From contig NC_068998.1 of NCBI RefSeq assembly GCF_001194135.2, positions 39,303,584 through 39,356,236 of the forward strand: a DNA stretch of 52,653 nt. The letters are read 5' to 3'. The notes under the pieces were generated by a model. The model had not been told where the DNA came from, made no database searches, and saw only the letters and a program-made list of their open reading frames with translations. The translations under genes and the position numbers were made by a program. Within the stretch, counting starts at the first letter, position 1. The number at the start of each line of letters is the position of its first letter. Below are positions 6,990 through 44,822 of the stretch, piece by piece. The stretch is from Octopus bimaculoides. Taxonomy: Eukaryota.

Positions 6990-7140
6990 CAACAAATTTC
7001 TTTTAGTTTCTGTCTACCAGATCCACTCACAAGGATCTGGTTGGTCCAAGACTATAGTGGAAGACACCTAAGGTGCCACGCAGTGGGACTGAACCATGCG
7101 CTTGGGAAGCAAACTTCTTACCACACACCCATACCTATAT

Positions 7141-7997
7141 NNNNNNNNNNNNNNNNNNNNNNNNNNNNNNNNNNNNNNNNNNNNNNNNNNNNNNNNNNNN
7201 NNNNNNNNNNNNNNNNNNNNNNNNNNNNNNNNNNNNNNNNNNNNNNNNNNNNNNNNNNNNNNNNNNNNNNNNNNNNNNNNNNNNNNNNNNNNNNNNNNNN
7301 NNNNNNNNNNNNNNNNNNNNNNNNNNNNNNNNNNNNNNNNNNNNNNNNNNNNNNNNNNNNNNNNNNNNNNNNNNNNNNNNNNNNNNNNNNNNNNNNNNNN
7401 NNNNNNNNNNNNNNNNNNNNNNNNNNNNNNNNNNNNNNNNNNNNNNNNNNNNNNNNNNNNNNNNNNNNNNNNNNNNNNNNNNNNNNNNNNNNNNNNNNNN
7501 NNNNNNNNNNNNNNNNNNNNNNNNNNNNNNNNNNNNNNNNNNNNNNNNNNNNNNNNNNNNNNNNNNNNNNNNNNNNNNNNNNNNNNNNNNNNNNNNNNNN
7601 NNNNNNNNNNNNNNNNNNNNNNNNNNNNNNNNNNNNNNNNNNNNNNNNNNNNNNNNNNNNNNNNNNNNNNNNNNNNNNNNNNNNNNNNNNNNNNNNNNNN
7701 NNNNNNNNNNNNNNNNNNNNNNNNNNNNNNNNNNNNNNNNNNNNNNNNNNNNNNNNNNNNNNNNNNNNNNNNNNNNNNNNNNNNNNNNNNNNNNNNNNNN
7801 NNNNNNNNNNNNNNNNNNNNNNNNNNNNNNNNNNNNNNNNNNNNNNNNNNNNNNNNNNNNNNNNNNNNNNNNNNNNNNNNNNNNNNNNNNNNNNNNNNNN
7901 NNNNNNNNNNNNNNNNNNNNNNNNNNNNNNNNNNNNNNNNNNNNNNNNNNNNNNNNNNNNNNNNNNNNNNNNNNNNNNNNNNNNNNNNNNNNNNNNN
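7141..7997. other. Assembly gap 1
   Basis: N run. Confidence 1.
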
Positions 7998-8059
<62 letters not shown>

Positions 8060-8794: not shown

Positions 8795-9385
8795 TCCAGT
8801 CATTTATAGTACCATATTAAATGGACCATGTCCACACTGTCATATCTATAAAGGTTTACCTTGGTATTTCAAATGAACAAATAGATTTTGATTCCACTTC
8901 CTTCCAATTTCTTTTACTCTTTTTAGTAGTCTTTGATAATTTTTATAAAGAAATCTATTTCTCTTTCTTCTGTGGCAGCTACTGAGGAACATTTCTTGTT
9001 CATCTCCATTTATTTTTACTATGTTTTGATAAAATATATTTTTATAGCTAGATTTCACTTCTCAAATTTCACTCCAGAAATTTGGTAGGAGAGGGTTAGT
9101 CAATAATATCAACCCCAGTACTTGGCTGGTTCTTCATTTTATTGAGCTTGGAAGGGGCAGTTGATCTGAGCAGGATTTGAAATTGGAATTGTAAAAAGCC
9201 ATGATTAAACACAGTAAGGCAGTTTATCCAACACTAACAATTCTGGTTATTCATTGCTCTAATAATAATGATTTCTTTTAATAGAAATAATGATATTGTC
9301 TTTTTCATTAGGCACAAAGTTCATTATTGTTGGTGAATGAGCACATGTGACTGCAGCTGATACTAATATATTACAAGTGTTTCTA

Positions 9386-9600
9386 AGGTGGTGAGCTGGC
9401 AGAATTGTTGGCATGCCAGGCAAAATGCTTAGCAGCATTTCCTCCATCTTTACATTCTGAATTCAAATTCTGCCAAAGTCAACTTTGTCTTTCATCCTTT
9501 CAGGGTTGATAAAATAAGTACCAGTTAAGCACTGGGGTCAATATAATTGACTTACCCCTCCCCCAAAATTCCTGGTCTTGTGCCAAAATTTGAAACCAAT
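9386..9600 (+). mobile_element. tRNA-derived SINE (family C). Further copies at about 10296-10930 (-, split), 20603-20805, 29957-30168 (-), 30691-30897, 33406-33585, 34190-34325 (-), 35198-35381 (-), 36395-36500 (-), 43665-43883
   Basis: GGTGGTGAGCTGGCAGAAT head and the conserved core GTCGACTTTGCCTTTCATCCTTTCGGGGTCGATAAAATAAGTACCAG, which from memory resembles the Nin/Deu-type SINE domain. Confidence 0.88.
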
Positions 9601-15151: not shown

Positions 15152-15454
15152 TATCATCATCATCATCGTTTAACGTCTGCTTTCCATGCTAGCATGGGTT
15201 GGACGATTTGACTGAGGACTGGTGAAACCGGATGGCAACACCAGGCTCCAATCTAATTTGGCAGAGTTTCTACAGCTGGATGCTCTTCCTAACGCCAACA
15301 ACTCAGAGAGTGTAGTGGGTGCTTTTACGTGTCACCCGCACGAAAACGGCCACGCTCGAAATGGTGTCTTTTATGTGCCACCCGCACAAGCCAGTCCAGG
15401 GGCACTGGCAACGGTCTCACTCGAAAATCCTACGGGAGCCAGTCTTCTCCCGCA
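15152..15454 (-). mobile_element. 3' end of an RTE LINE or partner SINE, runs into gap 2. Related 3' ends at about 46614-46905, 1075-1260, 29420-29550, 50270-50385, 50575-50705 and 51475-51660
   Basis: Shared catcatcgtttaacgtc...catgctagcatgggttggacg...cagctggatgcccttcctaacgccaac block with a (GAT)n tail. Confidence 0.8.
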
Positions 15455-16428
15455 NNNNNNNNNNNNNNNNNNNNNNNNNNNNNNNNNNNNNNNNNNNNNN
15501 NNNNNNNNNNNNNNNNNNNNNNNNNNNNNNNNNNNNNNNNNNNNNNNNNNNNNNNNNNNNNNNNNNNNNNNNNNNNNNNNNNNNNNNNNNNNNNNNNNNN
15601 NNNNNNNNNNNNNNNNNNNNNNNNNNNNNNNNNNNNNNNNNNNNNNNNNNNNNNNNNNNNNNNNNNNNNNNNNNNNNNNNNNNNNNNNNNNNNNNNNNNN
15701 NNNNNNNNNNNNNNNNNNNNNNNNNNNNNNNNNNNNNNNNNNNNNNNNNNNNNNNNNNNNNNNNNNNNNNNNNNNNNNNNNNNNNNNNNNNNNNNNNNNN
15801 NNNNNNNNNNNNNNNNNNNNNNNNNNNNNNNNNNNNNNNNNNNNNNNNNNNNNNNNNNNNNNNNNNNNNNNNNNNNNNNNNNNNNNNNNNNNNNNNNNNN
15901 NNNNNNNNNNNNNNNNNNNNNNNNNNNNNNNNNNNNNNNNNNNNNNNNNNNNNNNNNNNNNNNNNNNNNNNNNNNNNNNNNNNNNNNNNNNNNNNNNNNN
16001 NNNNNNNNNNNNNNNNNNNNNNNNNNNNNNNNNNNNNNNNNNNNNNNNNNNNNNNNNNNNNNNNNNNNNNNNNNNNNNNNNNNNNNNNNNNNNNNNNNNN
16101 NNNNNNNNNNNNNNNNNNNNNNNNNNNNNNNNNNNNNNNNNNNNNNNNNNNNNNNNNNNNNNNNNNNNNNNNNNNNNNNNNNNNNNNNNNNNNNNNNNNN
16201 NNNNNNNNNNNNNNNNNNNNNNNNNNNNNNNNNNNNNNNNNNNNNNNNNNNNNNNNNNNNNNNNNNNNNNNNNNNNNNNNNNNNNNNNNNNNNNNNNNNN
16301 NNNNNNNNNNNNNNNNNNNNNNNNNNNNNNNNNNNNNNNNNNNNNNNNNNNNNNNNNNNNNNNNNNNNNNNNNNNNNNNNNNNNNNNNNNNNNNNNNNNN
16401 NNNNNNNNNNNNNNNNNNNNNNNNNNNN
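15455..16428. other. Assembly gap 2
   Basis: N run. Confidence 1.
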
Positions 16429-16639
16429 ACGTATTTTGACTCTCTCATCTCAGAACCTTCTCCAGAGCCTTCATACATGCAAATGTATATGTAACTGGAA
16501 GGACAAATCCGTATATATTCTAGTAAGTACACAAGTGTCCATATACACTGTAGATATATAGGTATGCTGTTCTTGATTCTACCTAGGTGTCCTTATTATT
16601 AAAATACCTTGATTCTGTTGGATCCTGAAAATAACTATA

Positions 16640-19585: not shown

Positions 19586-21190
19586 GTCTAAGCTGATCAT
19601 GAGGGAGCCTTGGCATAGTCACTTGACCTATTGAAAATAGCAGCCAAATATCACCTCAAACTACAACATATCATTCACAAAGAAATTACATAGGTAATGT
19701 AGTCCTAGATACACTATTCCTGAAAAAGGAAAGGATTGGTTGGTCATGGCTTGAGTACTTTTGATGACCTTGCTCTAAACAACAACTGCTAATCTCACCC
19801 AGGTTTCTCTACTTTTCAGTATATGTGAACCTACCCCTCCTTCTGCAAACAGGTTCATGGTCACTGTGCCTCACTGTAAGACTAACAAATGACATATATT
19901 CACCCTTTTGACTAACATCTTGTTAAAGACCATTGTTAGTCATTAAATAGGTAACTTACAGTGATTGCATGCAAGAGACTTTCAAGAATGAATATTGGAC
20001 TGGAGAGAAATCTTGTTACTTTCTTTTCGATGATTTGAAGGTTTTGATAGTTGAGTGGATAAGGTTTTGGACTAACTATTCACAGGTTATTAGTTCAAGT
20101 CTGTTGCATGCATTTCATTGTATTTCTAGACTGCATTACTCACCTAGCTATTAAAAATAGAGAACAGATTAAAGAATATTTTCTTTGATTAACTGGCTTC
20201 CAAGCCACCAAAAAATTAAATAACCACCACCTTCAGGGCTAAAACATAATGAAATATCTGATATTATTGAAGAACTTTGTAGCTAACTGTAGGACTTAGA
20301 CTGGCCATGAAGAGCTTGACTTACAAGGATTATATATACAGAAAGGTAACACAATAATTAACTATTATGCACTGATAAATAGAGCTTTTAATGCAGTTAC
20401 TCAACCAGCTACAAACAGCTGCCAAATCCCCCTTAGATCACTCCCTGCTCTCTCAGAAAAAGGAAGAACACATTAGATAATACAGTCTTCGATACAGTGT
20501 CTGAGAAAAATGATGCAGGGCATAGTTGGAACACCTGTAATCACAGGGGTTGAAATGGGATAAAACATGACTTAAAAAGCATTTATTATTTTATTTGGCT
20601 AGAAGGTGTTGAGCCAGCAGAATCATTAGTGCATTGGATGAAATGTTTAGTGGCATTTCTTGAGGCTCATTTATGTTCTGAGCTCAAATTCTGCCGAAGT
20701 TGACTTTGCCTTTCATCCTTTTGGAGTTGATAAAATAAATATTAGTTGAGTACTGGCATCAATGTAATCAACACACCCTTCTCCCTAAAATTGCTGGCCT
20801 TTGAAAGAATTATTTTATTTGGTTAGGGAAACTCAAGCATGGAAAAATAATGAAATATTTGTTAATCATTCAGTGTTCCTATATTGATTATAGTGGTAAG
20901 CTGTATTTATCACTTAGACTGTAAGCTGTTTATTATTAGGCAGACTAAGCTTGGCCATGAGCATTTTGTCTTACAAGGATTGCATGAAAAGGTGACAAAA
21001 AATAAAGCTAAAAGAATAACATCAGAGAATTTCTTACGTGATGCACATTTATTCTTGAGAACTTTAGAATATTTCACCAGGGTCAAAGATGGCTGTACAG
21101 AGTCCATTATTTATATAAAAAAAAATCTTTCCATTTTCTTAAATGTTTCCATATTCATTATTCCCAGGATAACTATATAGAGTTGGTTAT

Positions 21191-23266
21191 TTATTTATAC
21201 ATAAAATGTTCCTGAAAATTATTTGCTGTCACAAAGCAGTCTATGACTTTCTCATTAAATTCTGTTATTTTCTTCACCATATTACACTCCAATGACACCA
21301 TACCCAAGGCTGTCAGGTTATCAATTTCTATGGGGTTCCGCAAAAAGGATTTTATTTTCTCTAAAGTTTTAAAACACCTTTCTGATTCCTCAGTAATCAT
21401 TGGAGTGGTGATTAGAATTTTAATAAGCTTTACAGTTTCTGAGAATGTTGTTTGTAAGTGACTCTCATTAAAAAATCTTAATAAATCTATCAGCTTTTTG
21501 GTTTGATATATATCATTCCTGGCATAGAGGACAGCAAGCTCAGTTCCAAGTTTTTCTCTGTCAAGCATAGGATATGCATCAACTGCTTGAGTTAGCTCAT
21601 AGTTAGGAAATTTTGAAAGAAATGATGAAAAGTTATCTTGTACAAGTAACTTGCTTGCTTCCAAATGATTAATAAAACTTAATCTTTCACTACATTTCAG
21701 TAAAATTATATCACACACCTCCTCGATGGTGGCTGCTTTCTCTGGACAACATTTTTTCTGTTTATTCTCAGAACAGTTTTCTTTGACTTCCACATATTCA
21801 TTGCGAATGGTTTTCATAATGTGATAAAAAGTACTTAAAGAGATGGTAGCTTTTCTAACATCAATGCTTTTGTATTCAAACTGGGAAAATAGTTCATCAA
21901 TATGAGGCATTACTTTGGAGAAAAAATAGAGCCAAAACTCAAAATCAGAATCGTTCAATATTCTTTTTATAGCTGTTGCTTTAGTTCCAATTTCTGTTAA
22001 AGTCCGTGTTTCTAATACATCACAACAAACTCTTAAAGTATCTTTCATGGCATGTATGGCATTGATTGTGAAAGTGATGTTACTTTCTTTGAAATTTGTA
22101 CAAGAAGGCACTGCCATTTGTCCTAAAATCTTCTCCAGTACTTCTGGTCGTGAAAAATAAGTCGAAATACTTGATATATCATTGAAAAATACTTTCATGC
22201 TGCTATTTTGCCATGTTGCTTTCTGAATAATTCCACAATGCTTGTGTGCATAGCAGTGAATGAAATGGGCATTTTTATACTGTTCTTTCATCAGTGTATG
22301 GACATTTGTCTTATCTCCACTTAAACTGACAGCCCCATCATATGTTTGAGCAATAAGTTTACTGGGACAATCTGGTATCAAACCATGCAACTCTTTCTGC
22401 AGCATTTCTGTCAAAGCATCAACTGTTCTATTTACGGGGTTGAAAAATCCCCAGAATCTTTCAACAGGTTTCCCATTCAGCATATATCTCAGAACCACTG
22501 CCACTTGCATTTTATCACAGACATCAACTATATCATCACACATAACAGCTAAATACTGTGCATGGCTTACCTCTTCCTTGATTTGATTTTGGCAAATACT
22601 GAGCATAGCTTCTAAGAGTTTATTCAAAATTGCTTGTGATATTCCTTCTAAAACTGTTACTGAACATATGTCAAATCTAAAACTAGAATCCAAATGAATC
22701 ATGTACTCAATTAGACCTTGAAATACATTCAAACTTTTATCCAAATGTGAATTGTCAAGTCCTCGAATATGTAAATTATATTCTCCACAAAATTTCAAAC
22801 AATTTATTATTTTGTGAAGGACATTTCTATTTTTCTTCACTCGTTCATTGTGCCATGTGACTGCGGGACTGTCATCATGATTCTGAAGGGCAGAACAAGT
22901 TGTGCAACCCAGAAGTGTTAGGTTTATCATGTTGTTCATATGCTTGCTGGATTGTTCATGTTTTCTAATCTTCTGCTGAAGACATCTTAAATCATTTACT
23001 CCAGATTTTGTCCAAAGAACATCCCCACCAAATAGTAAACATGGGTAACAATATAATGAATTTGATTTTTCACAACCACACACCCAAAGACATTTATCAT
23101 ATATGTTACAGTTGAATTGCCTCACATATTCAATACTCCTGCTTGGACCACATTTCTGCATGTTTAAATTTGGCATTGGTCTGCCTAGAGACTTGATTTC
23201 AATTTGTTCATTAAGTTTCAATTTACTGAAATCTATAGTTTGTAAATATTTAACTTTGTTTGACAT
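21191..23266 (-). CDS. hAT-transposase-derived protein (TTF-type Zn finger, DUF4371-like core, hATC dimerisation region; ZMYM1/THAP12-like), about 691 aa, probably domesticated
   Basis: Uninterrupted ORF. First true ATG (MSNKVK) at 23266; the ORF-track start at 23323 is a TTG within an acceptor-like pyrimidine tract. Motifs: WVCGC...YCYPC...W...G...HEQSSKH (TTF finger), MCDDIVD...QVAVVLRY, AQTYDGA, HFIHCYAH, TPMITEESERCFKTLEKIKSFLRN. Confidence 0.9.
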   Translation of the reverse strand: MSNKVKYLQTIDFSKLKLNEQIEIKSLGRPMPNLNMQKCGPSRSIEYVRQFNCNIYDKCLWVCGCEKSNSLYCYPCLLFGGDVLWTKSGVNDLRCLQQKIRKHEQSSKHMNNMINLTLLGCTTCSALQNHDDSPAVTWHNERVKKNRNVLHKIINCLKFCGEYNLHIRGLDNSHLDKSLNVFQGLIEYMIHLDSSFRFDICSVTVLEGISQAILNKLLEAMLSICQNQIKEEVSHAQYLAVMCDDIVDVCDKMQVAVVLRYMLNGKPVERFWGFFNPVNRTVDALTEMLQKELHGLIPDCPSKLIAQTYDGAVSLSGDKTNVHTLMKEQYKNAHFIHCYAHKHCGIIQKATWQNSSMKVFFNDISSISTYFSRPEVLEKILGQMAVPSCTNFKESNITFTINAIHAMKDTLRVCCDVLETRTLTEIGTKATAIKRILNDSDFEFWLYFFSKVMPHIDELFSQFEYKSIDVRKATISLSTFYHIMKTIRNEYVEVKENCSENKQKKCCPEKAATIEEVCDIILLKCSERLSFINHLEASKLLVQDNFSSFLSKFPNYELTQAVDAYPMLDREKLGTELAVLYARNDIYQTKKLIDLLRFFNESHLQTTFSETVKLIKILITTPMITEESERCFKTLEKIKSFLRNPIEIDNLTALGMVSLECNMVKKITEFNEKVIDCFVTANNFQEHFMYK

Positions 23267-23466
23267 TGCAGTGGAGAAGGAACAGAGCAAGCGGCAGTAA
23301 GAATGCGAGCTACATAGGAACAACAGCAGAAGAAAGAGGATAGAGAAACTAGTAGTAGATAAAGACTGGAGAAAATAGCTTTGAAGGAACTAGCAGCTTA
23401 AGGATTTGGCAGTAGAAAAAAACTATAGTTAAAGCGAAGTAGAAAAAGCATAGTAAATTTATATAA

Positions 23467-23512
<46 letters not shown>

Positions 23513-24309
23513 CGAGTTAAGAATATAGTAACCGGTCAGTGGGAATAGGACAGAAACTATTATCAGTGGAGAAACAGTAGAGGAACTGTCAGTGAAAAAG
23601 CAGCAGAGAAAGTAGCCGGGATGAAATGGCAACTTGAGGATTTGATACTAATACCACAGGGAAAAGTGAAGAAGTGGAGGGGAGGAAGAAAAAATTGATA
23701 GTGGAAGAGAAGCAGACACAGTATAGTTAAGTAACGCACATAAACATGTATGTGAGGGGTGAAGAACAATATTCTTGCATAATAACATAAAGGTAGAAAT
23801 GGGACAGAGACAATATTAGTGGAGAAGCAGTGGACGAACCGGTAACTGGAGGGTTTGAGGGAAAAGAAACAGGCAAAAGAGAAAAAGTAAGTAAAAAAAA
23901 ATAAACAACCGATCGTTGAAGAGAAGCAAAAAGCAATCTAGTGATGTAACATATATATGTAAATAAATATAGAGTGATAGAGAAAGTAAAGAACAATAAC
24001 AATTATAGATATTACAACAACATAATAGATTTCACAATGAATTAGTATAAGGCTGACCTATAGTAACAACAATGATAATAGAAACATATTGAAACCGTAG
24101 CAGTAAACATGTTATTAAAAAAATCATGTGGTATGTTACTAACTTCAGTTGGGATGCCGCAATAACATGTGTTGAGCGGCATTGAATGCAGCCGCCCTAG
24201 AATACATTGTTACCCTCCGCCGTCGTCCTAATCGCTACTGTTTAGTTTTATCATTTCATTGGTTCATTTTTAAAAAAAGCTAATATATTTCTTGTTTCGC
24301 ATTCTGAGC

Positions 24310-24590
24310 CTCACCCTTCACTGTTCATCTCTCGACACTGTTTTCTTTTTCGTTCTCACCATCTCTCGTGATTAATCTGCAAAATCTCTCTCTCGCTATC
24401 AGTCGATCTATTTAAATATTTTTCACATTACTGTCTATCATTACGCGCACCCTGCCCTACATGCATACACAAACATGTATGTACATTCATCCATGCACGC
24501 GCGCACACACCCACATCTCTCTCTATATAATAAATATATATATATCATATGCACATGTTCATATACATATACACATGCGCGCAGGCGCAG
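24310..24590 (-). promoter_or_regulatory. Putative promoter and non-coding first exon of the hAT-derived gene
   Basis: Locally CpG-richer segment; NRF1-like CGCGCAGGCGCA at 24578-24589; minus-strand GTGAG donor candidates near 24314 and 24358; matching acceptor AG at 23311-23310, about 43 nt above the ATG. Inferred, no transcript evidence. Confidence 0.35.
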
Positions 24591-26189: not shown

Positions 26190-26261
26190 CTCCCCGGCGG
26201 GGAATCGAACCCCGGTCTCCCGCGTGACAGGCGGGGATACTTACCACTATACTACCGAGGA
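26190..26261 (-). tRNA. tRNA-Asp(GTC)
   Basis: Reverse complement TCCTCGGTAGTATAGTGGTAAGTATCCCCGCCTGTCACGCGGGAGACCGGGGTTCGATTCCCCGCCGGGGAG, 72 nt. Full cloverleaf, acceptor TCCTCGG/CCGGGGA, anticodon GTC (26226-26228), intact A and B boxes. Confidence 0.97.
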
Positions 26262-26503: not shown

Positions 26504-26573
26504 ATGGCTGTTTCGTTAAGGTCATTCTGCTCACTGTCTAGGGTTTTCCAAAAGCTCCCTAACAAAATCCCTT
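26504..26573 (+). CDS. MRPL21: MRPL21 exon 1 (mitochondrial targeting peptide)
   Basis: AAAATGG start; MAVSLRSFCSLSRVFQKLPNKIP is R/S/L-rich with no acidic residues; GTAAGT donor at 26574, phase 1, compatible with exon 2. Confidence 0.78.
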
Positions 26574-28421
26574 GTAAGTATATGTATATTTATGCCACAC
26601 TTCTTTATGCAGTGTCTATACTAATCTCGATAATGTAATTTTAAAAGTACATTTGTTCAGCGATTTTTCTTTTTGTAAATAAGTACTTTAATACTCGTGC
26701 TATGATGGTTTGCGGTCTCGCCACCGTTTCTCCCTCGCTACCCCTGTTTCCTACAAGGGCATAACACTCCAAAGGGGTATCTATATGTTGTCAACTGTTG
26801 TTAGATAAAGCAGGCAACCTAATTTCTTCCAACACACCCTATTTATTTTTAAATGAAAGATACACTTGATAATATATAAATACACGTGTCTGGAAAAAAA
26901 AAATAATAAGAGGTGGTTACGACTGAAACACACTTTATGATTAGTCTACTTTATCAAGGTATATCTCGAATAAACAATTGCAAGGGCATCAGTGAATGAT
27001 TTAAATTACTGTGTTTTCGCAAACTTACGCCATCTCTGAAGTTTGCTCAATGCAGTATTTGTATAGTCTGCTTTAATCGATCGTAAATTGTATAAGAATT
27101 AAGGTCACGGAAGAAGTCTGTTACTGCACAATAAACAGAAAAGGGGGTACCAGCAACTGATGATTTTAAAAAGATATAAGATGTTAATGCTTCTGCATTG
27201 GGATATTTCCAATATGCGGACGTCTCCAGCATGTGAACAGTCAACAAATAGTACAAGGCCATTTTTTAAAAAATTCTTCATAATAAATTTCAGAGTTTCG
27301 CAGTCAGTAAAAAATTAGTTTTTAAACTGTAGTTTACGATTTTATTGCCATCATCATCATCGCCTCAGCTTCCTTTCACACTAACCATCACAAGACTCAG
27401 TATCATCACCGTGACCACTATCAGTCACTACACGTCTTACTGCAATACTGCACCTCATTTCTGATTATGTACGGTACACAATCGCCCCAACATTGCTTTG
27501 GTAAAACTTCACTTACCAATACATTCTACAAAGATATATGAATACATAGCTAATTTAAGAAAGTGGAGAGAGAGAAAGAGAAATCAGTAAATAAATAATC
27601 AAAATAGAGGTATGCATGCACACTTCCTCAGTATACATTGTGCCAAAAATACAGCATTACTACAGGTGATTGCCTGGTTGAGGCACTGGAGCAGCCAGGT
27701 ACTCTCCCTAACGTCATCTGATACTTTGGTGAAGTTGGATGCTAATGGAGCAGTCCAGCTCTCCACACCATCTCAGCAGCTAGAGGTTGAAAAGATATAA
27801 TTTACCAACAAATTATGCTATTTCAGTATCTTGTTTAGCTATGGGATGAAGTATCCCATACTCCACTGCAGCAGTAAGGACATATGATGGAACGAGTAAG
27901 TCACTAATGGTGGTATTGGGCCTGAGATATCTGTCTCTAGCCTGCTGTTTCATCTCTCTGACTATTTTACTTTTACTACAATGACTGTTGTTCCTTTGAA
28001 CTAGCTATCTGTATATCCCTTTTCACCCACTGTCCATTCAATATAATTGTTTCACAAATGACATGTACATCATAGAATCTCCATGGTCACTTACTGGTTT
28101 TCTATTCTCATTACCACAAGCACTAACTCTAATGTATTAATGTTTTTTGCTTGTATTGAAAGAAAAGTTTCAGCTTTACACATCCTTTGTATCCAATACT
28201 TGTGTCTTGTTACCAGCCAATATTATACTTTAGGTGCTTCTCTTGCATATTATTCCTGTGCATTTAGTGTTTCTTTGTCAGCATATACTACATACCCCCT
28301 TATGTTAGCCGAGACTCTATCTAACTACATTCTCAGAATTCATTGATTGAACTAAGTAATAAAGCTTAAACAGGTTGTTTTATTACATCTTATTTGAAAT
28401 GTTCATTTATATTTTTTGTAG

Positions 28422-29174: not shown

Positions 29175-30520
29175 ATTTAGACCAACATGGACACTTCTGA
29201 TAATTCTAATAAACCAAAACACATTACATTTGCAGTTCCTCATTGTAATCACTTCAATATTTATGTTGTAAAATGCAAAGTAACAAAGTAAAAGTGTCCA
29301 TAAGCCTCCTAGCAGAGGAATTTGAAGAACTGCAGTCTAATGCTAGTTTAATGGAATAATATGGATGAGACTTAAATCTCCACCTGGAAAGATCCCTTTG
29401 TCTCTTTGGTAACATTTCTGGGTAAGGGTATCCAACCATAGAAACCAAGCCAAAGCAGACTGGATCCTGGTGCAACCCTCCAGCCTATCAGCTCTGGTCA
29501 AACCTTCCAACCCATGCCAGTATGGAAAATGGATGTTAAAGGATGATGATGAATCATGCTATCCAACAACTCAACAAATCACTTTCAGTTCATGACCTAT
29601 GCACAGCATTTTTCAGTACCTTTTCTTGTTGGCTATTTTGCCTTTGTACCCACCACTTATATTGCTAATGTCTTTGAGAAGTACATGAACACCTTACATT
29701 CTCATTTCCCTTCTCCAACAAATGAAAGTGTTGTGGCTATGTAAGAAATTATGTGTCGGGCAAGTACACAGGAAATTTCTTGTAAGTCAAGTTTGAAAGC
29801 TAGTTTTCATTCCCTTTTGTGGCTATTTCATATTACTTGAATTGACTAGCATTTGAGAAGCACGATTGTCCTATCTTTCAATTTGTAGTGTTGTGTATTT
29901 ATAAGAAACTAGTCTTTTTTTCTTTTTTTATCTCAAGTATTAAGGTATGTTAATCCTTTCTACTGGAAGCACAAGGCCTCAAATTTGAGGGAAGGGATTA
30001 AGTTGATTATATCAACTCTATTACGCAACTGGTACTTAATTTATTGACCCTGAAAGCATGAAAGGCAAAGTCGGCCTTGGTGGAATTTGAACTCAGAACA
30101 TAGCGGCAGACGAAATACCACTAAACATTTTGCCTGGCATGCTAACAATTCTTCCAGCTCACCACCTTAAGGTATCACATTAATAAATGGCTCTAGAGTT
30201 AAGAAAGCACTAAATTTGAACCTATGATCATGAAATCATTATATTGTGTTCCCTGAACAAGTTACCTTACTCTAGTGATCTTTAGCTTACTTTTTTTATT
30301 GCTTCCAAGCTGTGAACTTGCTGATCAATGTAGTTAGTTTACCTGAATGAAAACCAGACTTCATTCCTGTTTTACGGTTGGGTGGTTAGTGATAAGGAGA
30401 GACATCCAGCATAAAAAAAACAATTGCATGTCCCACCCACCCTCAAAAATGTAAAATATTGTGTCTTTTTCTAGATTTTTAAAATAAAGTTGGTCTTGTT
30501 CTGCCTGAAATATTTTACAG

Positions 30521-30603: not shown

Positions 30604-32623
30604 GTAAGTTTAAATCTTATCATTGTTGAATTTGTGACAATACACATCAGTATATTTATCCTCAGTTCACCCAGATGAATAAATAATATGTAACTGGCAG
30701 AAACGTTAACACTCTGGACGAAATGCTTAGTGGTATTTCGTTTGTCTTTACATTCAGACTTCAAATTCCGCCAAGGTTGACTTTGCCTTTCATCCTTTCA
30801 GGGTCAATAAATTAAGTACCAGTTGTGTACTGGGGTCGATTTAATCGACTGGCCCCCTCCCCCAAAATTTCAGGCCTTGTGCCTAGAGTAGAAAAGAATA
30901 TGTAACTATTTTTTTTTTGTGTAGCTTTAGGCATTGCACACTTCATTTAACAGTAAATGTTAACAATTTTGATATTAGACTGTGGCCATGCTGGGGCACC
31001 ACTTGCAAGGATTTAGTTGAACTAATTAGCCCCAGTACTTTTTAAATCTGGTACTTATTCTATCAGTCTCTTTTGTCGAATTGCTAAGTTACAGTGGACA
31101 TAAACACACCAACATCAGTTGTCAAGCGGTGGAAGACAAACATAGACACAAAGATACAAACTCACACACACGCGCACACGACGGGCTTCTTTCAGTTTTT
31201 GTCTATCAAATCCACTCAAGGCTGTGGTTGGCCCAAGGCTAAAGTAGAAGTGCCATGCAGTGGAGCTGAACCTGGTGCCATGTGGATGGGAAGCAAACTT
31301 CTTACCACACAGCTGCACCTGTGCCTATATTGTCTACATTTGTTTTCATGCCTTACCTGGTGAATGCCTAGAATTGAAATTTATTTCTAGTCTTTGAAAT
31401 AAGGAACCAGATAGCTGCAATTCCACTTGAAGAATAAACCAGGAATCTTAAGAGCTAACAAAGGATCTACCACACTACCCCTTAACCCATTACAAAAAGC
31501 ATCCAACTTTCAATTCGTACCCTGCTACTAGATTATGTGGTGCACCAGCCTGAGTAAGAGATGGGGTGCTCATGACTGGAGCACTTTTGATCATAGGTTT
31601 GACTGACCTAGGGCTAAACAACGACGAAGCTTGCAAAAATTTGTGTAATATGTAGTGTATAACCCTAATATTACTATTTTCAGAAATTTTAAATATAACT
31701 ATATTGATATGCTATGAACATTAAATAGGCCTTCACATACTGCGCTGTTTGGTCAACATGGGTTAGGTCATTCTATCTAATTTTGATTTTAATATTTAGT
31801 CCGCGCGAGATCGATGTAATTGACTTACTACTCCTCGCCTAAAATTGTTGGTCTTGTGGCAAAATTTGATAACAATATTTTTGAGCATGAGTTATGTCCC
31901 TTTACGGTTCTGCGACTTAAACTTTCGTCCTTTCCGAACGAGATCAGAGAAAATGATCATGAATATAAATAAACAAGAAGCTCGTTTTGCAGCCATGGTC
32001 TTGGGTTTGATTATCACACTGTGGTATCTTGGGCAAATGTCATCTTTTGTAGCCTCGGGTGGACCTATACCTTCTGAGTGAAATTAGGTGTAGAAGCCCC
32101 TCCAGTGATTGCACTTGTACTTCGAAAGGATGCAGCCTTCTCAAACTATATCACGCTGATTCTGCCCGAGAATTACGTCAAGGGTATGCGTGTTTGTGGA
32201 ATACTCAACCACTTGTACCTGAATTCAGAAGCAGGTAATTTGGTTAATCAAAGAGCTGAATTTCTAGTATACGTAACAAGAAAACAATCTGACCACAATG
32301 TAGACAGTATTAAGAGACAATATACAGAATAAAGTCGGCAGTGAGTATATACTATTACATAGTATATAGTAAGGTATTCAATTAATGACCTTAAAATTTA
32401 TACAGTACCCACTAAACAAGACTATGTTTACCAAGATGCATAGTAGCTCTGGAGTTAACATACTTGACTGTTGACCACTAGAACATAAGTTCAAATCCTG
32501 GTGAACTGTTACAACAGGGCCTAGGACGATGGTAGTGGTGGTGATGGCAGTGGCGACAGTCCTGTGTGAGAGATGTTTTCAACTGTAAAAAACCTATTAA
32601 TGTATGTACCTCTTTGTTTGCAG

Positions 32624-33275: not shown

Positions 33276-35399
33276 GTAGGATTCCCTTTTGCTATTTCAC
33301 ATTGATTATACTCACTGACATGGATCGGTTATTTCTGTAACTGCTGACCATTTAGCGGTGTAATCACAGTTAAATCTTTTGTCAATATTGAGGAAAAGAA
33401 AACGAAGGTGGCACGCTGGCAGAATCGTTAGCATGCTGCACAAAATGCTTAGCAGCATTTTGTCTGTATGTTCTGAGTTCAAATTCTGCCAAGGTTGACT
33501 TCGTCTTTCATCCCTTCAGGGTCAATAAAATAAGTATCAGTTGAACACTGGGGGTCAATGTAAAGTTGCTGACCTTGTGCCAAACATTAAGGAAAACTGA
33601 CACAAGCAGAGTGATCTGATTTGCTTATTGCACAGCAATTATTGCAGTCAGTAGTTCAGTACCTGAACTGCACAGACATTGTGTCGCATGTTCCTTGATA
33701 TTCTGTTCCTTCAAGGCTGTGTTCCTGATCCATTGGGTTGATATTTATCTCTGGTGTTAAGTGAACAAGAGAAAAACCTCTGCTCTGAGGAAAGAAAACT
33801 AATCTGTTGTGAATAACTTTATCAGTGAGAGGAGTTTAACTTGATACTGCATACTACCAAATCACCAATCAGTTTTATCATATTGCTGCAGTGAATTAAA
33901 AAAAAAATTTGTTTCATTTTTTATTTCATTGTTTAGAAGCGGAATGGTTCTCATAATTCTTTCCAGGACCTCTGAAACCAGTGGGAGGGAGAAAGGTCTC
34001 CTCTGACTGGACATCTGGCCTAAATGCTTGCATAGAATGGATCAAAGGGTCAAGTGGTGGTGTTAAACTGAGCAAAGGATTAAATTTACCTTCCAAGTAG
34101 GCCACAATGAGATTTGAACTCAGAATGCAAAGAGCCAGAACAAAATTACAAAACTTTCTGTCCAATGCTCTAACAGTTCCATCTGCTCTAGACTGGTACT
34201 TTTATTATCAACTCCAGAAAGATGAAAGGCAAAGTTGACTTCAATAGGATTTGAACTCAGAATGTAAAGAACCAGAATAATTATCACAAGACATTTTATC
34301 CAATTTTTTAATGACTTTGCCATATTATACTGTTCTATCAATTGTGCATTGAGAGTTAAATAAAGCATGTCTGGTACCCCTATCAACTGGATCAACTCTC
34401 TTCTATTTTTTATCCATCAGTTTTTTTAAGACTAATCTATAGTAGAATGCAGAATATGTAGATACTTAGACAAAAGCTATATGAAGCAAAATAACAAATG
34501 AATAATTGAACCTGCATCTCCTCACTCATGCATTATCCATTATGCTACAGTCACTGACTTGACTCTATCAATCAAATAAGTCAGTTTGTCTGTAGGTCAC
34601 CGAGATTAGTAAATCTTAGTATTTGCTTCTCCCTGCTGACTTTTCCTCCTCCTTTTCTAATTCTAAAACCATTGACCTCTACCTAATTCACTTGGGTTGT
34701 TTAAGAAACGTATAAACTGCCCTTTTTTTACGGTGTCTGATAACCTAAGTATTGGGATTTTGACGTAGATCTCATTAGCTTCTATTTTGTCAAAGTCACA
34801 TGCTCTCTAGTTACATTTTATGCTATCTTCAAATATTTTGGTTTTATAATCCTTTTGTGTGGTTTAGTTATGTCTTCATTACTATCAACATCATCAACGT
34901 TTTTCCCAGCTGTCATGGGTTGGATGAGTCTGTTATACAACATTTCATTTGCCTTAATCTCATATGTGAGGCCTAACATTCAGAGATCTGATCTCATTGC
35001 CTCTTTCCCTGTCTTCCTCGGTTCTAACAACCTTCTACTGATAGTACACTGCTTTCATTGTCCTTTCACATGGCATGTTTATACCAGTGTAGTTGTCTGC
35101 ACTGCCTACATCAGTTGATTCTTTTAATGCCCTGCTACTCTTTCAGCACATTTGTGTTTTGCCCTTCATGATTCTTCTTCCTGTGATTATTCTTTTCTAC
35201 TCTAGGCACAAGGCCCAAAATTTTGGGGAGGGAGCCAGTCGATTAGATCGACCCCAGTATGCAACTGCTACTTAATTTATCGACCCCGAAAGGATGAAAG
35301 GCAAAGTTGACCTCGGTGGAATTTGAACTCAGAATGTAAAGACAGACGAAATATTGCTAATGTTTGTGCCAGCTCGCCGCCTGTGATTATTGCAGGCCC

Positions 35400-40171: not shown

Positions 40172-40630
40172 TCAATTTCCCTGTTTACATTGGTTAACAA
40201 TGTGCCCAGGCTGGTCACACCTGTAGCACACCACTTCCGGTTTCGGTGCCGTGTAGTCCCTGACTCTATGAGGACCCAGACACCTGCAACATGGTCCCTT
40301 CGTTGTTCGCCGAGCTTCTCTCACCTCATTCTTCTCCCTGGTAGTTTCCATTTGCCTCTTCGTCGTTTTCGTCTCTGCCATCGTACAAACTACATCGCGT
40401 GCGTTGTTCTTAGTCATGACACGAGATCGCTCTATCAACTCACTCACCAGCATGGTATGGATAACCGGTAGCTGCTGCCAACTTATTGAGATGTGATCGG
40501 GAAATCTGGTCACAAAGGCCAACCTCACAACACTCTCCATTGCCTCGCCAGAAATCCCTGCTAAAACCACCAATCTCCTAAACTCACTCGCATAGTTGTC
40601 GACATGTTCTCCGACCTGTTGTGGCAAAAC
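40172..40630 (-). mobile_element. Gypsy-type LTR retrotransposon relic: gag C-terminal half
   Basis: GEHVDNYASEFRRLVVLAG...VRLAFVTRFPD; degenerate knuckle CCRCLGPHRVRDY and intact CCHC knuckle CYRCDQPGHIVNQC. Confidence 0.85.
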
Positions 40631-41100
40631 TGAGATCTCAAACAGACGATCAGTCAATTTCATTTGCTATGCGCATGTGCAAAATCTTGAATTCCAATTT
40701 TGAAAGTATGTTCGTGTTTTTCTTATTTTGGAATTAAGAAGACAAACAAAAGTCGTTTGTTATGTGCAGATTTTAAAACCCGATCTTAGAAGCAGAAGAG
40801 TCAAAACCCGAGGATCTTATCTGATAATTTAACCAAAGTGATAAAACAAGGTATGTAAAAGGTAACTTATTTTCGCAATCCTTCGGTATTGGTAGACATC
40901 GTTCACCCACACAATTTTCCTTCATGACATGGATAAAGAGGCTAGGCTGAAACAGAGGGTGAATGACGTCGTCTCCTCGTACCAACATTCTGAAAACCAA
41001 TATCGAAATATTGCCCTTTTGGAATACAAAATTTCTGTGTACGTTTCTGTCAGCAATTATGTTTCTCTCAGACGTGCGCGCACGCACACGCATGCACACG

Positions 41101-41143
<43 letters not shown>

Positions 41144-41420
41144 TCGTTGTGGAGCAACATAGTATAACTACACATAATTAACGAAGTTTTCAGTACAAAA
41201 AATATTTGCTATTCCTAGATAAACACAACACGAAAATAATTTGTGATATGGTATCAAAATTGAAATAAATATAGAAAGCTGAAATTTAGAAAAATTAAAA
41301 AAAACCTCCTTTTACCTGAGGAATAAGAATATTTGCCAGACATTTAGCTGTTATTTCTAGCATAACGGGTTTTCTGGTGAGGGCTTGATAGTTTTTCGTC
41401 TGCTGTTTCAGGAGAAATCT

Positions 41421-41768
41421 ACGCATGCGCAAACAAACATATCCAATATATAAAACAGCCAGAGTTCTGTGCCCTTGGAAAGCCAGACGGGGCGACATCG
41501 GATGTTTTGTAAGAAAACTTGAAATTTTGGAAAAAGAAATTATTTCGGTTCCTAACCTCCGTATTTTTCTAAGTGAAATTAAAAACAACAACAAAAAAAG
41601 AAAATTCGAAAAAGCAACCCGCATTGTGTACTTTTATACTGTTTGTGATGGACAATTCCCTCACATATGCGCGCATTCTTGTGGTAAGTAGATAATATAT
41701 ATATTCTGCATTTGTAAATAGAATTCCGTGGTAACAAGACGAGAAACTGAACCATAATATATTTACAG
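41421..41768 (+). promoter_or_regulatory. Putative promoter and 85-nt 5'UTR intron of the zinc-finger gene
   Basis: NRF1-like ACGCATGCGCA at 41421-41431; GTAAGT donor at 41684 and tttacAG acceptor ending at 41768, 36 nt before the ATG. Confidence 0.45.
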
Positions 41769-43523: not shown

Positions 43524-43999
43524 AAGTGGTTCCCAACTAGGGTCCTTATAAGAGTTTGTCGTTAAACTTTATCTGCAATAAATTGGTTATACTTCAATAC
43601 ACAAAATATTTTAACAATTTTTTCTTTTGCACAATTTCTAATTATATTTAATTATAGAAAGACTGCTAGCTGTCAGAATCATTAGCACACTGGGCAAAAT
43701 GCTTTTAAGCATTTGGTCTGTCTTTACAATCTAAGTTCAAATTCTGCTGAGGTTGATTGTTTTTTTTTTGCCTTTCATCCTTTCAGGGTTGATAAAATAA
43801 GTACCAGTTGAGCACTGGGGTTGATGTAATCAACTAGCTCCCTTCCCTAAAATTGCTGGCCTTGTACCGAAATTTGAAAGTAATATCTAATTATAAAAAT
43901 ATAATGGGATTTTTTTAACCATCAAAGGGCTATGTGGATCCATCCAAGTAAAATAGGAATCAAAGGGGTTCATAGGTAAAAAATGGTTGAGGAACTCTG
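43524..43999. mobile_element. Charlie-type hAT MITE, copy 3, with a nested SINE (about 43665-43883)
   Basis: TIRs (c>a)AGTGGTTCCCAAC / GTTGAGGAACTCTG; perfect 8-bp TSD TCTTAGAA at 43516-43523 and 44000-44007. Confidence 0.88.
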
Positions 44000-44138: not shown

Positions 44139-44822
44139 CAGTAATCCCTCGCCATATCGCAGTTCACCTATCATGCACTCAGTACATTGTGGTTCACCTA
44201 TCGTGCACTCAGTACATCACAGTTCACCTATCGCACACTCAGTACATTGCAATTCACCTATCATGCACTCAGTACATCACAGTTCACTTATCGCGCACTC
44301 AATACATTGTGGTTCACCTATTGTGCACTCAGTGTATCACAGTTCACCTATTGCACACTCAGTACATTGCAGTTCACCTATCATGCACTCAGTACATCAC
44401 AGTTCACCTATCGAGCACTCAGTACATCATGGTTCACCTATCGCACACTCAGTACATCACGGTTCACCTATCATGCACTCAGTACATCATGGTTCACCTA
44501 TCACACACTGAGTACATCGCGGTTCACTTATTGCGCACTCAGTACATCGCAGTTCACTTATCGTGTGCTCAGTACATCGTGGTTCACTTATCGTGCACTC
44601 AGTACATCGTGGTTCACTTATTGTGCACTCAGTACATCATGGTCCACTTATCACGTGCTCAGTACATCGTAGATTTTTCTGGCTAATATATGTAAATTTA
44701 TATCACAGACTCCAGTATATCACAGGTTTCTATGGCCAATAGGTATTTATATTTTTTTAGATTTTAATTATTTCTGTAGGAGGTTTTGGAGCATAACACC
44801 TGCGATAGCTAAGGGATTACTG
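44139..44822. mobile_element. Tigger/pogo-type MITE carrying an amplified minisatellite
   Basis: TA + CAGTAATCCCTCGCCATATCGC ... GCGATAGCTAAGGGATTACTG + TA. Confidence 0.88.
44161..44670 (+). repeat. 30-bp minisatellite, 17 units
   Basis: Consensus about (A/G)GTTCACCTATCGYRCACTCAGTACATCRY in exact 30-nt register; no unique spacers. Confidence 0.97.

What the first reader, a model, noticed from the sequence alone, without database searches (positions are those of the whole stretch)
21191..23266. Probably domesticated hAT transposase: intact ORF and DDE acids, but no TRW motif and no TIRs
Seen: 691 codons without a stop, in a window where every other transposon ORF is broken. The candidate catalytic acids are retained (MCDDIVD, TYDGA, ESERCF) along with CxxH (HCYAH). 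The segment that in this family normally reads roughly P-x-x-x-x-TRWN is replaced by MAVPSCTNFKESN, and AHxLNL has become AHKHCG. I see no TIRs or 8-bp TSD in either flank. There is a host-like acceptor 43 nt above the ATG, upstream donors, an NRF1-like site and AATAAA at 21053-21048. Known: the R-W pair (Hermes R318/W319) is needed for hAT hairpin chemistry, and ZBED/ZMYM/THAP12 genes are domesticated hATs. Inference: a lineage-specific, catalytically impaired DNA-binding or chromatin protein under purifying selection.
Basis: partly seen in the sequence, partly recalled or inferred. Interest (0 to 1): 0.7.

Follow-up and report, generated by a model that had tools for sequence, protein, structure and literature searches.

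The report
Octopod-specific domesticated hAT transposase gene
A jumping-gene enzyme (hAT transposase) that inserted beside the MRPL21 gene in an ancestor of octopuses and argonauts has been kept there ever since as an ordinary single-copy host gene under strong selection, having lost its transposon ends and one key catalytic-site tryptophan while keeping its metal-binding acids.

Summary
A 691-codon ORF lies on the minus strand at 21191-23266. Its predicted fold matches Hermes hAT transposase.

It keeps the residues that align with Hermes D180, D248, E572, C265 and H268 (here D244, D310, E629, C338, H341). The Hermes R318/W319 column reads K393/E394, and the family's QLNL motif reads KHCG. There is no TIR/TSD signal above chance.

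The domestication reading is strongly supported:
- Intact orthologues sit head-to-head with MRPL21 in O. vulgaris, O. sinensis and Argonauta hians (two contigs). A fourth octopus contig of unknown species is colinear with the window.
- dN/dS is 0.09-0.17 overall, including the zinc-finger N-terminus. The RNase H core is lowest at 0.05-0.07.
- Similarity to Argonauta stops at the CDS edges.
- Neutral drift would have introduced about 28 stop codons per lineage.

The W and QLNL losses are shared by Octopus and Argonauta and occur in none of about 95 other homologues. Most of those homologues keep every motif.

"Catalytically impaired" is still inference. In the domesticated hAT Kat1, the equivalent Trp is dispensable for cleavage. 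Expression and splicing were not testable here.

Verdict: a new, apparently undescribed member of a well-known kind (domesticated hAT transposases). Interest is moderate.

The parts
21191..23266 (-). Complete single-exon CDS of the domesticated hAT (ZMYM1-like/Tip-like) transposase gene, 691 aa plus stop
   Evidence: The ORF is intact, orthologues are intact in 4 other species/contigs, dN/dS is 0.09-0.17, and the predicted fold matches Hermes.
22940..23050 (-). N-terminal CCHH zinc finger (C73-x2-C76-x26-H103-x5-H109), TTF/BED-like; the presumed DNA-binding module
   Evidence: C73, C76 and H109 are invariant and H103 is >=90% conserved across 40 homologues. Spacing confirmed. pLDDT is 85-94. 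omega for aa 1-120 is 0.06-0.19.
22232..22561 (-). RNase H-like catalytic core (aa 236-345), containing D244, D310 and C338-x2-H341
   Evidence: Beta strands 239-275 and 304-309 in the AF2 model. This is the most constrained region, omega 0.045-0.067.
22535..22537 (-). Codon D244, first catalytic Asp. It corresponds to the first D of the family DETTD motif and presumably to Hermes D180
   Evidence: The Hermes profile alignment begins downstream of this residue, so the equivalence to D180 rests on the motif's position, not on a direct alignment.
22337..22339 (-). Codon D310, second catalytic Asp (family YDGA motif; presumably Hermes D248)
22244..22255 (-). C338-Y-A-H341, the retained CxxH motif (Hermes C265/H268)
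22232..22243 (-). KHCG, replacing the family's QLNL motif immediately after CxxH
   Evidence: The family residues are 87-95% conserved. Octopus has KHCG and Argonauta has EHSG.
22085..22090 (-). K393-E394, occupying the Hermes R318/W319 column. The Trp is 100% conserved in 83 reference family members
21380..21382 (-). Codon E629, the catalytic Glu (Hermes E572) within ESERCF
21290..21514 (-). C-terminal hAT dimerisation region (aa 585-659)
   Evidence: Pfam PF05699 scores 18.6 bits, below the cut-off. The region is colinear with relatives that pass the cut-off.
23310..23311 (-). AG of a candidate 3' splice acceptor, preceded by a polypyrimidine tract, 43 nt upstream of the ATG (use untested)
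   Evidence: Conserved among Octopus species but not in Argonauta.
24309..24314 (-). GTGAGG, a candidate splice donor of a putative non-coding first exon (use untested)
21048..21053 (-). AATAAA, a candidate poly(A) signal about 140 nt after the stop codon
   Evidence: Conserved in three Octopus sequences but not in Argonauta.
24579..24588 (+). NRF1-like GCGCAGGCGC in the intergenic region shared with MRPL21
   Evidence: one mismatch to GCGCATGCGC. It could just as well serve MRPL21.
26190..26261 (-). tRNA-Asp(GTC), a syntenic landmark between the gene and MRPL21
   Evidence: Also present in the O. vulgaris and O. sinensis loci, absent from the Argonauta loci.
26504..26617 (+). First coding exon of MRPL21 (MAVSLRSF...; the 3' limit is approximate), divergent from the hAT-derived gene
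   Evidence: A Ribosomal_L21p gene is called at the same relative position in L001, L003, L004 and L005.

Best explanation
This is a domesticated hAT transposase gene.

A ZMYM1-like/Tip-like hAT element (TTF/BED-like zinc finger, DUF4371/RNase H core, hAT dimerisation domain) inserted next to MRPL21 before the Octopus-Argonauta split. It then lost its terminal inverted repeats and has persisted since as a single-copy, single-exon host gene (shown).

On the stem lineage about a quarter of the family's near-invariant positions were replaced. The replacements cluster in five motifs, including the R-W motif and the QLNL motif that flank the active site. The new residues were then frozen by purifying selection (shown).

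The protein most likely works as a zinc-finger DNA-binding, dimerising nuclear protein that recognises specific DNA sites and no longer carries out transposition. Loss of the Trp used for hairpin formation and strand transfer, together with the remodelling next to the catalytic His, probably cripples or alters the second chemical step (inferred).

The strictly retained D-D-E and CxxH residues and the very low omega of the RNase H core leave open whether the site still binds metal and nicks DNA.
For: Fold and family:
- AF2 model pLDDT 82, pTM 0.70.
- The top 11 Foldseek hits are Hermes, probability 1.00.
- The family profile hits Hermes at E 2e-5 with motif-level register.

Orthology and synteny:
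- Intact ORFs lie head-to-head with Ribosomal_L21p in O. vulgaris, O. sinensis and A. hians, two contigs.
- The window's MRPL21 exon 1 starts at 26504.
- The O. vulgaris locus is colinear with the window over about 18 kb.

Selection:
- NG86 dN/dS is 0.16-0.17 within Octopus and about 0.10 for Octopus-Argonauta.
- Fisher p ranges from 9e-10 to 1e-93. Simulated neutral drift gives P(no stop) = 0.001 at the within-Octopus distance and 0 at the Argonauta distance.
- All domains are constrained, and the RNase H core is lowest.
- Nucleotide similarity to Argonauta begins 5 nt before the ATG and ends 7 nt before the stop.

Not mobile:
- No TIR/TSD signal above chance.
- One copy in the window and in each locus.
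- One protein cluster per annotated octopus genome.

Motif pattern:
- D244, D310, E629, C338 and H341 are kept. R-W becomes K-E (Octopus) or K-G (Argonauta). QLNL becomes KHCG or EHSG. These changes occur only in the cephalopod clade among about 100 homologues.
- Of 153 conserved family columns, 107 are kept and 38 are changed in all five cephalopod sequences, mostly to the same residue in both genera.
Against: - No expression data could be obtained. The one non-genome contig (L002) is colinear with genomic DNA, including the putative intron, so it is not evidence of a spliced transcript.
- Both NCBI gene models start at M189 and omit the zinc finger. A shorter isoform cannot be excluded, although aa 1-188 are under selection.
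- dS for Octopus-Argonauta (about 1.45) is near saturation, so that omega is approximate.
- Loss of the Trp does not prove loss of cleavage, as the Kat1 W576A mutant shows.
- DNA binding by the zinc finger is inferred from conserved Cys/His residues only.
- Only two deep lineages (Octopus, Argonauta) were available. No squid, cuttlefish or Nautilus locus could be inspected.
Confidence: 0.7

Rival explanations
1. The gene is domesticated but still catalytically active. The protein would be a host-controlled DNA nickase or endonuclease, as Kat1 is in Kluyveromyces, that uses its intact DDE/CxxH centre on specific genomic targets. It would have lost only the ability to integrate.
For: - All five catalytic-centre residues have been retained across a divergence with dS of about 1.45. 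Degenerate decapod relatives lost one or two of them: Homarus D->E; Macrobrachium C lost and E->D; Panulirus D->N and E->G.
- The RNase H core is the most constrained region, omega 0.045-0.067.
- In Kat1 the Trp equivalent to Hermes W319 is dispensable for cleavage, hairpinning and in-vivo function, while CxxH is essential (PMC4763223).
Against: - The Trp is 100% conserved in 83 reference family members. In cephalopods it is E in Octopus but G in Argonauta, so the site looks relaxed and not re-purposed.
- The four residues directly following the catalytic His are all replaced (QLNL -> KHCG/EHSG). So are further near-invariant positions around the RW motif (T392, F396, R399).
- According to a review abstract seen (PMC4091102), most domesticated transposases have lost endonuclease activity.
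- Catalytic acids sit in the most conserved structural blocks and may be retained for folding alone.
Confidence: 0.2
2. It is an autonomous or recently immobilised hAT transposon copy whose ORF is intact simply because the insertion is young.
For: - The ORF is intact with a DDE triad.
- The family is a large transposon family: 5,278 representative clusters.
- Most relatives keep all catalytic motifs.
Against: - The same locus and orientation are found in four species, including Argonauta at dS of about 1.45.
- No TIR/TSD signal.
- Single copy.
- dN/dS is about 0.1-0.17.
- Clade-specific loss of the invariant Trp.
Confidence: 0.02
3. The domestication is much older and is shared with decapod crustaceans, or an already-domesticated gene moved horizontally between crustaceans and cephalopods. 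On this view the cephalopod gene and the motif-degenerate lobster, prawn and spiny-lobster genes form one gene family.
For: - In the NJ tree the cephalopod clade attaches to Panulirus P0041 in 94 of 100 bootstraps, then to Macrobrachium and Homarus. All of these are degenerate at catalytic positions.
- The decapod proteins are the closest named relatives at 43-55% identity, whereas the mollusc Aplysia is only 28% identical.
Against: - The decapod loci have different neighbours and no MRPL21. The Panulirus copy sits among other transposon ORFs and needs a multi-exon model.
- The decapod sequences carry different lesions from the cephalopod ones.
- All of these are long branches, so long-branch attraction in a simple NJ tree is likely.
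- A short-branch relative with intact motifs and unknown host (P0003, 53%) lies in the same subclade.
Confidence: 0.05
4. It is a decaying transposon relic whose long ORF is a chance survival.
For: Pfam matches are weak and several family motifs are degenerate.
Against: - Simulated neutral evolution gives P(no stop) = 0.03, 0.001 and 0 at the three observed distances.
- ORFs are intact in five independent sequences, with only in-frame indels.
- dN/dS is far below 1.
Confidence: 0.01

Closest known systems
Human ZMYM1 (C-terminal hAT-derived part) and invertebrate 'ZMYM1-like' proteins
   Same: - The architecture is the same: TTF/BED-like CCHH finger, DUF4371, hAT dimerisation region.
[quoted passage not shown]
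- The ZMYM1 C-terminus is described as hAT-derived and closest to plant hAT elements (PMC3212892), and the family here also reaches plant TTF-type proteins.
   Different: - ZMYM1 is eutherian-specific and is fused to MYM zinc fingers. This gene has no MYM fingers, is restricted to octopods as far as found, and sits at a different locus. It is an independent domestication.
- No direct sequence comparison with human ZMYM1 was run.
Kat1 (Kluyveromyces lactis hAT transposase 1)
   Same: It is a domesticated hAT at a fixed locus with retained DDE and CxxH. Kat1 shows that a domesticated hAT can work without the Trp equivalent to Hermes W319.
   Different: - Kat1 still has that Trp naturally, still recognises TIR-like sequences, and has a demonstrated function in mating-type switching.
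- Here the Trp is naturally absent, no target sites are known, and no activity has been shown.
DAYSLEEPER/SLEEPER (angiosperms) and the vertebrate ZBED genes
   Same: These are lineage-specific domesticated hAT transposases that keep a zinc finger and the hAT dimerisation domain, and that are single-copy, syntenic and under purifying selection.
   Different: - From my own knowledge, not tested here: SLEEPER and most ZBED genes have lost catalytic acids and carry a canonical BED finger.
- This protein keeps D-D-E and CxxH, and no Pfam zf-BED match was found at E<=1.
Hermes transposase (Musca domestica), structures 2BW3/4D1Q/8EDG
   Same: It is the best structural match. The sequence motifs C265/H268, R318/W319 and E572 align in register with the family profile.
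   Different: - Hermes is an active Ac-group transposase with TIRs.
- Sequence identity is only 12-14%.
- The octopus protein lacks the W319 equivalent and has no TIRs.
Tip group of hAT transposons (Tip100, BuT2, hAT-4_BM)
   Same: BuT2 is reported to carry DUF4371 and hATC (PMC3942097). Plant TTF-type/DUF4371 proteins are detectable relatives.
   Different: - Those are mobile elements with TIRs and 8-bp TSDs.
- Placement of this gene within the Tip group, as opposed to Buster, was not tested, because no reference sequences were available.

Membership tests
hAT superfamily transposase (protein homology) | Hermes-like fold: an RNase H core interrupted by a large all-alpha insertion domain | tested here: met
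   The top 11 Foldseek hits are Hermes chains, E 2e-7 to 6e-6, probability 1.00, 509-557 aligned columns. The model has pLDDT 82.2.
hAT superfamily transposase (protein homology) | C-terminal hAT dimerisation region (PF05699) | tested here: met
   The window protein alone scores 18.6 bits, below the 21.4 cut-off. It is nonetheless colinear over its full length with relatives that pass (P0003 34.2 bits, P0006 37 bits). The family profile aligns this region to Hermes.
hAT superfamily transposase (protein homology) | DDE catalytic triad plus CxxH motif | tested here: met
   D244, D310, E629, C338 and H341 are retained in all five cephalopod sequences. The first two Asp are assigned by motif position, because the Hermes profile alignment starts downstream of them.
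hAT superfamily transposase (protein homology) | Conserved R-W dipeptide (Hermes R318/W319) | tested here: not met
   K393/E394 in Octopus and K/G in Argonauta. The Trp is 100% conserved in 83 reference homologues.
Mobile hAT element | Terminal inverted repeats of 10-25 bp flanked by an 8-bp target-site duplication | tested here: not met
   1 candidate against a mean of 2.1 in shuffles, within 3 kb on each side. The weak bracketing inverted pair is not supported by blastn.
Mobile hAT element | Multiple, insertionally polymorphic copies in the genome | not testable with these tools
   No octopus genome could be scanned. Indirect evidence: one copy in the window and in each 22-kb locus, and one protein cluster per annotated genome.
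Domesticated (exapted) transposase gene | An orthologous, syntenic position conserved across species that diverged long ago | tested here: met
   The gene lies head-to-head with MRPL21 in the window, O. vulgaris, O. sinensis and A. hians. Octopus-Argonauta dS is about 1.45.
Domesticated (exapted) transposase gene | An intact ORF under purifying selection | tested here: met
   dN/dS is 0.09-0.17 and all regions are below 0.23. The neutral simulation excludes chance survival of the ORF.
Domesticated (exapted) transposase gene | Expression and a host function | not testable with these tools
   No RNA-seq data were accessible. The existence of NCBI gene models (P0117, P0119) is only indirect evidence.
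Tip (Tip100/BuT2) group of hAT; ZMYM1-like | Architecture of TTF-type CCHH finger, DUF4371 and hATC | tested here: inconclusive
   The CCHH finger is conserved. DUF4371 scores only 14.9 bits in the window protein but 48.8-230.9 bits in relatives. DUF4371 is not exclusive to the Tip group (my own knowledge).
Tip (Tip100/BuT2) group of hAT; ZMYM1-like | Phylogenetic placement with reference Tip transposases as opposed to Ac or Buster | not tested
ZBED (BED-finger) domesticated hAT genes | Pfam zf-BED domain | tested here: not met
   No zf-BED match at E<=1. The finger has BED-like CCHH spacing, but the relatives' source names call it TTF-type.

The most novel reading that the evidence does not exclude
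Octopods carry a host-encoded hAT-derived enzyme that still cuts or nicks DNA. Its D-D-E/CxxH centre is intact and its RNase H core is the most constrained part of the protein, but its hairpin and strand-transfer apparatus has been remodelled. It would then be a programmed DNA-breaking or transposon-policing factor in a cephalopod lineage, comparable in kind to Kat1, RAG1 or PiggyMac.
Probability: 0.15. Interest if true: 0.8.

Novelty: new member of a known kind. Interest (0 to 1): 0.5.

Why it matters
Domesticated transposases are a recurrent source of new regulators and, more rarely, of programmed DNA-cutting enzymes. Well-documented cases in molluscs are few. A metazoan-wide survey of transposon-derived transcription factors was built on BED, THAP, CENPB and similar domains, and it reported no full-length hAT transposase associated with the Octopus ZBED genes (PMC10027918). 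It would therefore have missed this gene.

Here the full standard of evidence short of expression is met: synteny, selection, loss of transposon ends, and lineage-specific remodelling. That makes this a clean octopod-specific example.

The combination of strictly retained catalytic acids with natural loss of the invariant Trp is a useful natural experiment. It bears on which hAT active-site elements are needed for which step.

The analysis also shows that both NCBI gene models for this locus omit 188 N-terminal codons, including the zinc finger, that are under selection.

Tried and rejected
- **Pfam and PDB searches with the single sequence** gave only sub-threshold hits. The family alignment was needed to get a signal.
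- **TIR candidates** from the repeat finder (I5, I9, I11, I14, around 19.6-20.4 kb and 24.8-24.9 kb) were rejected. Blastn supports neither the pairings nor any repeat family, and the TIR+TSD scan is at chance level. A first pure-Python version of that scan timed out.
- **L002 as a transcript** was rejected as expression evidence. It is colinear with genomic DNA across the proposed intron, and it ends in a dispersed repeat.
- **A disrupted N-terminus in O. sinensis**, suggested by the 503-aa model, was rejected. The full ORF is intact with only a 3-bp in-frame deletion.
- **P0117 as a second locus** was rejected. It equals window residues 189-691 exactly.
- **Shared synteny with decapod homologues** was tested and rejected.
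- **TIRs on the contig of the closest relative with intact motifs** (L006) were not found. The contig is short, so this is uninformative.
- **Literature searches for the SRA run identifiers**, meant to identify the host species of L002 and L006, found nothing.
- **The whole-locus tblastx** between Argonauta and the window was mostly low-complexity noise. Only the MRPL21 exon-1 hit was useful.
Full report
**Observation**

It lies on the minus strand from ATG 23266 to the stop at 21191 and has 691 codons. On its own the protein gives only sub-threshold Pfam matches: Dimer_Tnp_hAT 18.6 bits against a cut-off of 21.4, and DUF4371 14.9 against 32.1. A single-sequence PDB search found nothing useful. 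The hAT assignment therefore had to be established by other means.

**Family**

A database search returned 115 homologues, most about 700 aa long and colinear from end to end. They include:
- an octopus cluster at 94% identity;
- Argonauta hians at 74%;
- proteins of unknown host with intact motifs at 47-53%;
- decapod crustacean 'ZMYM1-like' proteins at 43-55%;
- many insect proteins at 33-40%;
- Aplysia at 28%;
- plant TTF-type proteins at about 21%.

An exhaustive HMMER search found 5,278 representative clusters at E<=1e-3 and 364 at E<=1e-30. The next representative after the query's own cluster is only 43% identical. Relatives pass Pfam's DUF4371 and hATC thresholds.

A profile of 40 members hits Hermes transposase at E 2e-5, with the motifs in register:
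- family C..H on Hermes C265/H268;
- family TRW on R318/W319;
- family AERCFS on E572.

An AlphaFold2 model built from that alignment is confident (pLDDT 82.2, pTM 0.70), and its top 11 PDB matches are all Hermes chains. The protein is a hAT-superfamily transposase homologue with an N-terminal C-x2-C-x26-H-x5-H finger.

The literature places DUF4371+hATC elements such as BuT2 and Tip100 in the 'Tip' group (PMC3942097). It also describes the ZMYM1 C-terminus as hAT-derived and closest to plant elements (PMC3212892). I did not test subgroup placement with reference sequences.

**Motifs**

The motif states were tabulated across about 100 homologues.
- The window protein keeps D244 (family DETTD), D310 (YDGA), C338/H341 (HCYAH) and E629 (ERCFS).
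- The column of Hermes R318/W319 reads K393/E394.
- The QLNL motif that follows the catalytic His reads KHCG.
- Argonauta shares both lesions (K/G and EHSG).
- No other homologue has this pattern, and more than 85% keep every motif.

I then examined the 153 alignment columns that are at least 85% conserved in 83 reference members. In the five cephalopod sequences, 107 are kept in all five and 38 are changed in all five. The changed columns usually carry the same residue in Octopus and Argonauta. They cluster at residues 164-180, 199-214, 342-352, 385-401 and 682-685. This indicates a burst of change on the stem lineage followed by stasis. The zinc-finger ligands are among the retained positions.

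**Orthology and synteny**

In every genome locus the gene lies head-to-head with a Ribosomal_L21p (MRPL21) gene:
- Argonauta hians, two contigs;
- O. vulgaris;
- O. sinensis.

In the window the first MRPL21 exon starts at 26504 on the plus strand, 3.2 kb from the ATG. A tRNA-Asp lies between them. That tRNA is also present in the two other Octopus loci but not in Argonauta.

The O. vulgaris locus is colinear with the window over about 18 kb at 87-93% identity, interrupted only by dispersed repeats. Against Argonauta, nucleotide similarity (76%) begins 5 nt before the ATG and ends 7 nt before the stop, with nothing alignable in the flanks.

The 503-aa NCBI models are truncated annotations. P0119 is the O. 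sinensis model. P0117 is identical to window residues 189-691. The O. sinensis N-terminus is intact in frame with only a 3-bp deletion.

There is one copy in the window and one in each fetched locus.

**Selection**

Nei-Gojobori dN/dS values:

| Comparison | dN/dS | dS |
|---|---|---|
| window vs O. vulgaris | 0.17 | 0.078 |
| window vs a more distant octopus contig (L002) | 0.16 | 0.18 |
| Octopus vs Argonauta | 0.09-0.10 | about 1.45, near saturation |

- Fisher tests of dN against dS give p from 9e-10 to 1e-93.
- A substitution-only neutral simulation expects 3.5, 7.3 and 28 stop codons at the three distances, with P(no stop) of 0.03, 0.001 and 0.
- All regions are constrained. The 188 codons missing from the NCBI models have omega 0.11-0.22. 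The RNase H core has omega 0.045-0.067, the lowest of any region.

**Not a mobile element**

A systematic search for an 11-nt TIR plus an 8-bp TSD within 3 kb on either side gave 1 hit, against a mean of 2.1 in shuffles. The inverted pairs reported by the repeat finder are weak and are not supported by blastn.

**Regulatory claims**

The acceptor-like AG at 23311-23310, the donor-like GTGAGG at 24314-24309, the AATAAA at 21053-21048 and an NRF1-like site at 24579-24588 all exist. They are conserved only among the closely related Octopus sequences. In Argonauta an 18-nt tandem repeat abuts the ATG. The Logan contig L002 is colinear with genomic DNA through the proposed intron, so it is not a spliced transcript. 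Expression therefore remains untested.

**Origin**

A bootstrap NJ tree recovers the cephalopod clade in 100 of 100 replicates. It attaches that clade to motif-degenerate decapod genes (Panulirus in 94 of 100 replicates, then Macrobrachium and Homarus), within a subclade that also holds short-branch sequences with intact motifs from unknown hosts. The decapod loci are not syntenic with the cephalopod locus, and their lesions differ. I read this as independent fates of related elements, with long-branch attraction a likely contributor. A crustacean-like source element, meaning horizontal transfer before domestication, is possible but unproven.

**Mechanism**

Shown: the gene is a fixed, single-copy, selectively maintained derivative of a hAT transposase. 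It retains the zinc finger, the RNase H core and the dimerisation region, and it lacks transposon ends.

Inferred: it acts as a DNA-binding, dimerising nuclear protein that no longer transposes.

Whether it is catalytically dead is open. The invariant Trp and the residues next to the catalytic His are gone. However, in the domesticated hAT Kat1 the equivalent W576A mutant still cleaved DNA, formed hairpins and supported mating-type switching; it lost only strand transfer. CxxH, which is retained here, was essential (PMC4763223). The intact D-D-E/CxxH set and the very low omega of the core keep a nickase or endonuclease role alive as the main rival, at about 0.2.

**Novelty**

Searches of the paper library found no description of this gene. 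A metazoan survey of transposon-derived transcription factors did not recover a full-length hAT transposase associated with the Octopus ZBED genes (PMC10027918). Databases label the orthologues 'hypothetical', 'uncharacterized' or 'ZMYM1-like'. It is a new member of a well-known kind, domesticated hAT transposases. It is of moderate interest, and would be of higher interest if the catalytic centre proves active.

Noticed in passing
window 21191-23266; proteins P0117 and P0119: Both NCBI gene models for this locus are 503 aa and start at the M189 equivalent. P0117 is identical to the window's residues 189-691; P0119 is the O. sinensis model. They omit 188 N-terminal codons, including the zinc finger, that are intact in every species and under purifying selection (omega 0.11-0.22). 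Either the annotation is truncated or a shorter isoform exists.
   Followed up: partly
L007 (Homarus P0004), L008 (Panulirus P0041), Macrobrachium P0019: Decapod crustacean 'ZMYM1-like' relatives are the closest named homologues at 43-55% identity. Each carries different lesions in catalytic residues: D->E; D->N and E->G; CxxH lost and E->D. They lie at non-syntenic loci. They may be decaying copies or independent domestications. They group with the cephalopod clade in an NJ tree, possibly through long-branch attraction.
   Followed up: partly
L001 9838-9993, and the equivalent position in L004: In Argonauta hians an 18-nt tandem repeat (TCCTCTCTCTGCCTCGGG, 8.7 copies, 98% matches) ends about 10 nt upstream of the gene's ATG. 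It replaces the polypyrimidine/AG acceptor-like sequence seen in Octopus.
   Followed up: partly
L001 and L004 (Argonauta hians contigs BAAFZT010000063.1 and BAAFZT010000133.1): Two Argonauta contigs carry near-identical copies of the gene (dS 0.019), both next to MRPL21. They are probably uncollapsed haplotigs and not a duplication.
   Followed up: no
window 26190-26261 (-): A tRNA-Asp(GTC) gene lies about 240 nt upstream of the MRPL21 start. It is conserved at the same place in O. vulgaris and O. sinensis but is absent within 10 kb in Argonauta.
   Followed up: yes
window 41805-43232 (+): An intact 475-aa ORF encodes about 15 tandem C2H2 zinc fingers (zf-C2H2 E 6e-84). It is presumably a member of the expanded octopus C2H2 ZNF gene family.
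   Followed up: partly
window 40172-40663 (-): A 163-aa ORF ends in a CCHC zinc knuckle (PF00098, E 3.8e-6). It looks like a retroelement gag fragment, and three NRF1-like GC-rich motifs lie nearby at 40671-41430.
   Followed up: partly
window 20603-20756, 9384-9583, 29973-30168, 30694-30900, 33405-33563, 35186-35372, 43668-43865: A dispersed SINE-like repeat of about 150-200 bp has at least seven copies in the window, at 70-83% identity to copies in the O. vulgaris locus. One copy sits about 450 nt downstream of the gene's stop codon, where the Logan contig L002 ends.
   Followed up: no
window 44187-44686 (+): A tandem repeat is open in two reading frames (FTYRALSTSQ... and VHLSCTQYIT...). 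It is most likely a minisatellite and not a gene.
   Followed up: no
window ~7100-8050, ~15450-16430, ~45690-46620: Three runs of N, each about 1 kb, mark assembly gaps. They are flanked by microsatellites (TA/TG/CA repeats). The window comes from a scaffolded draft assembly.
   Followed up: no
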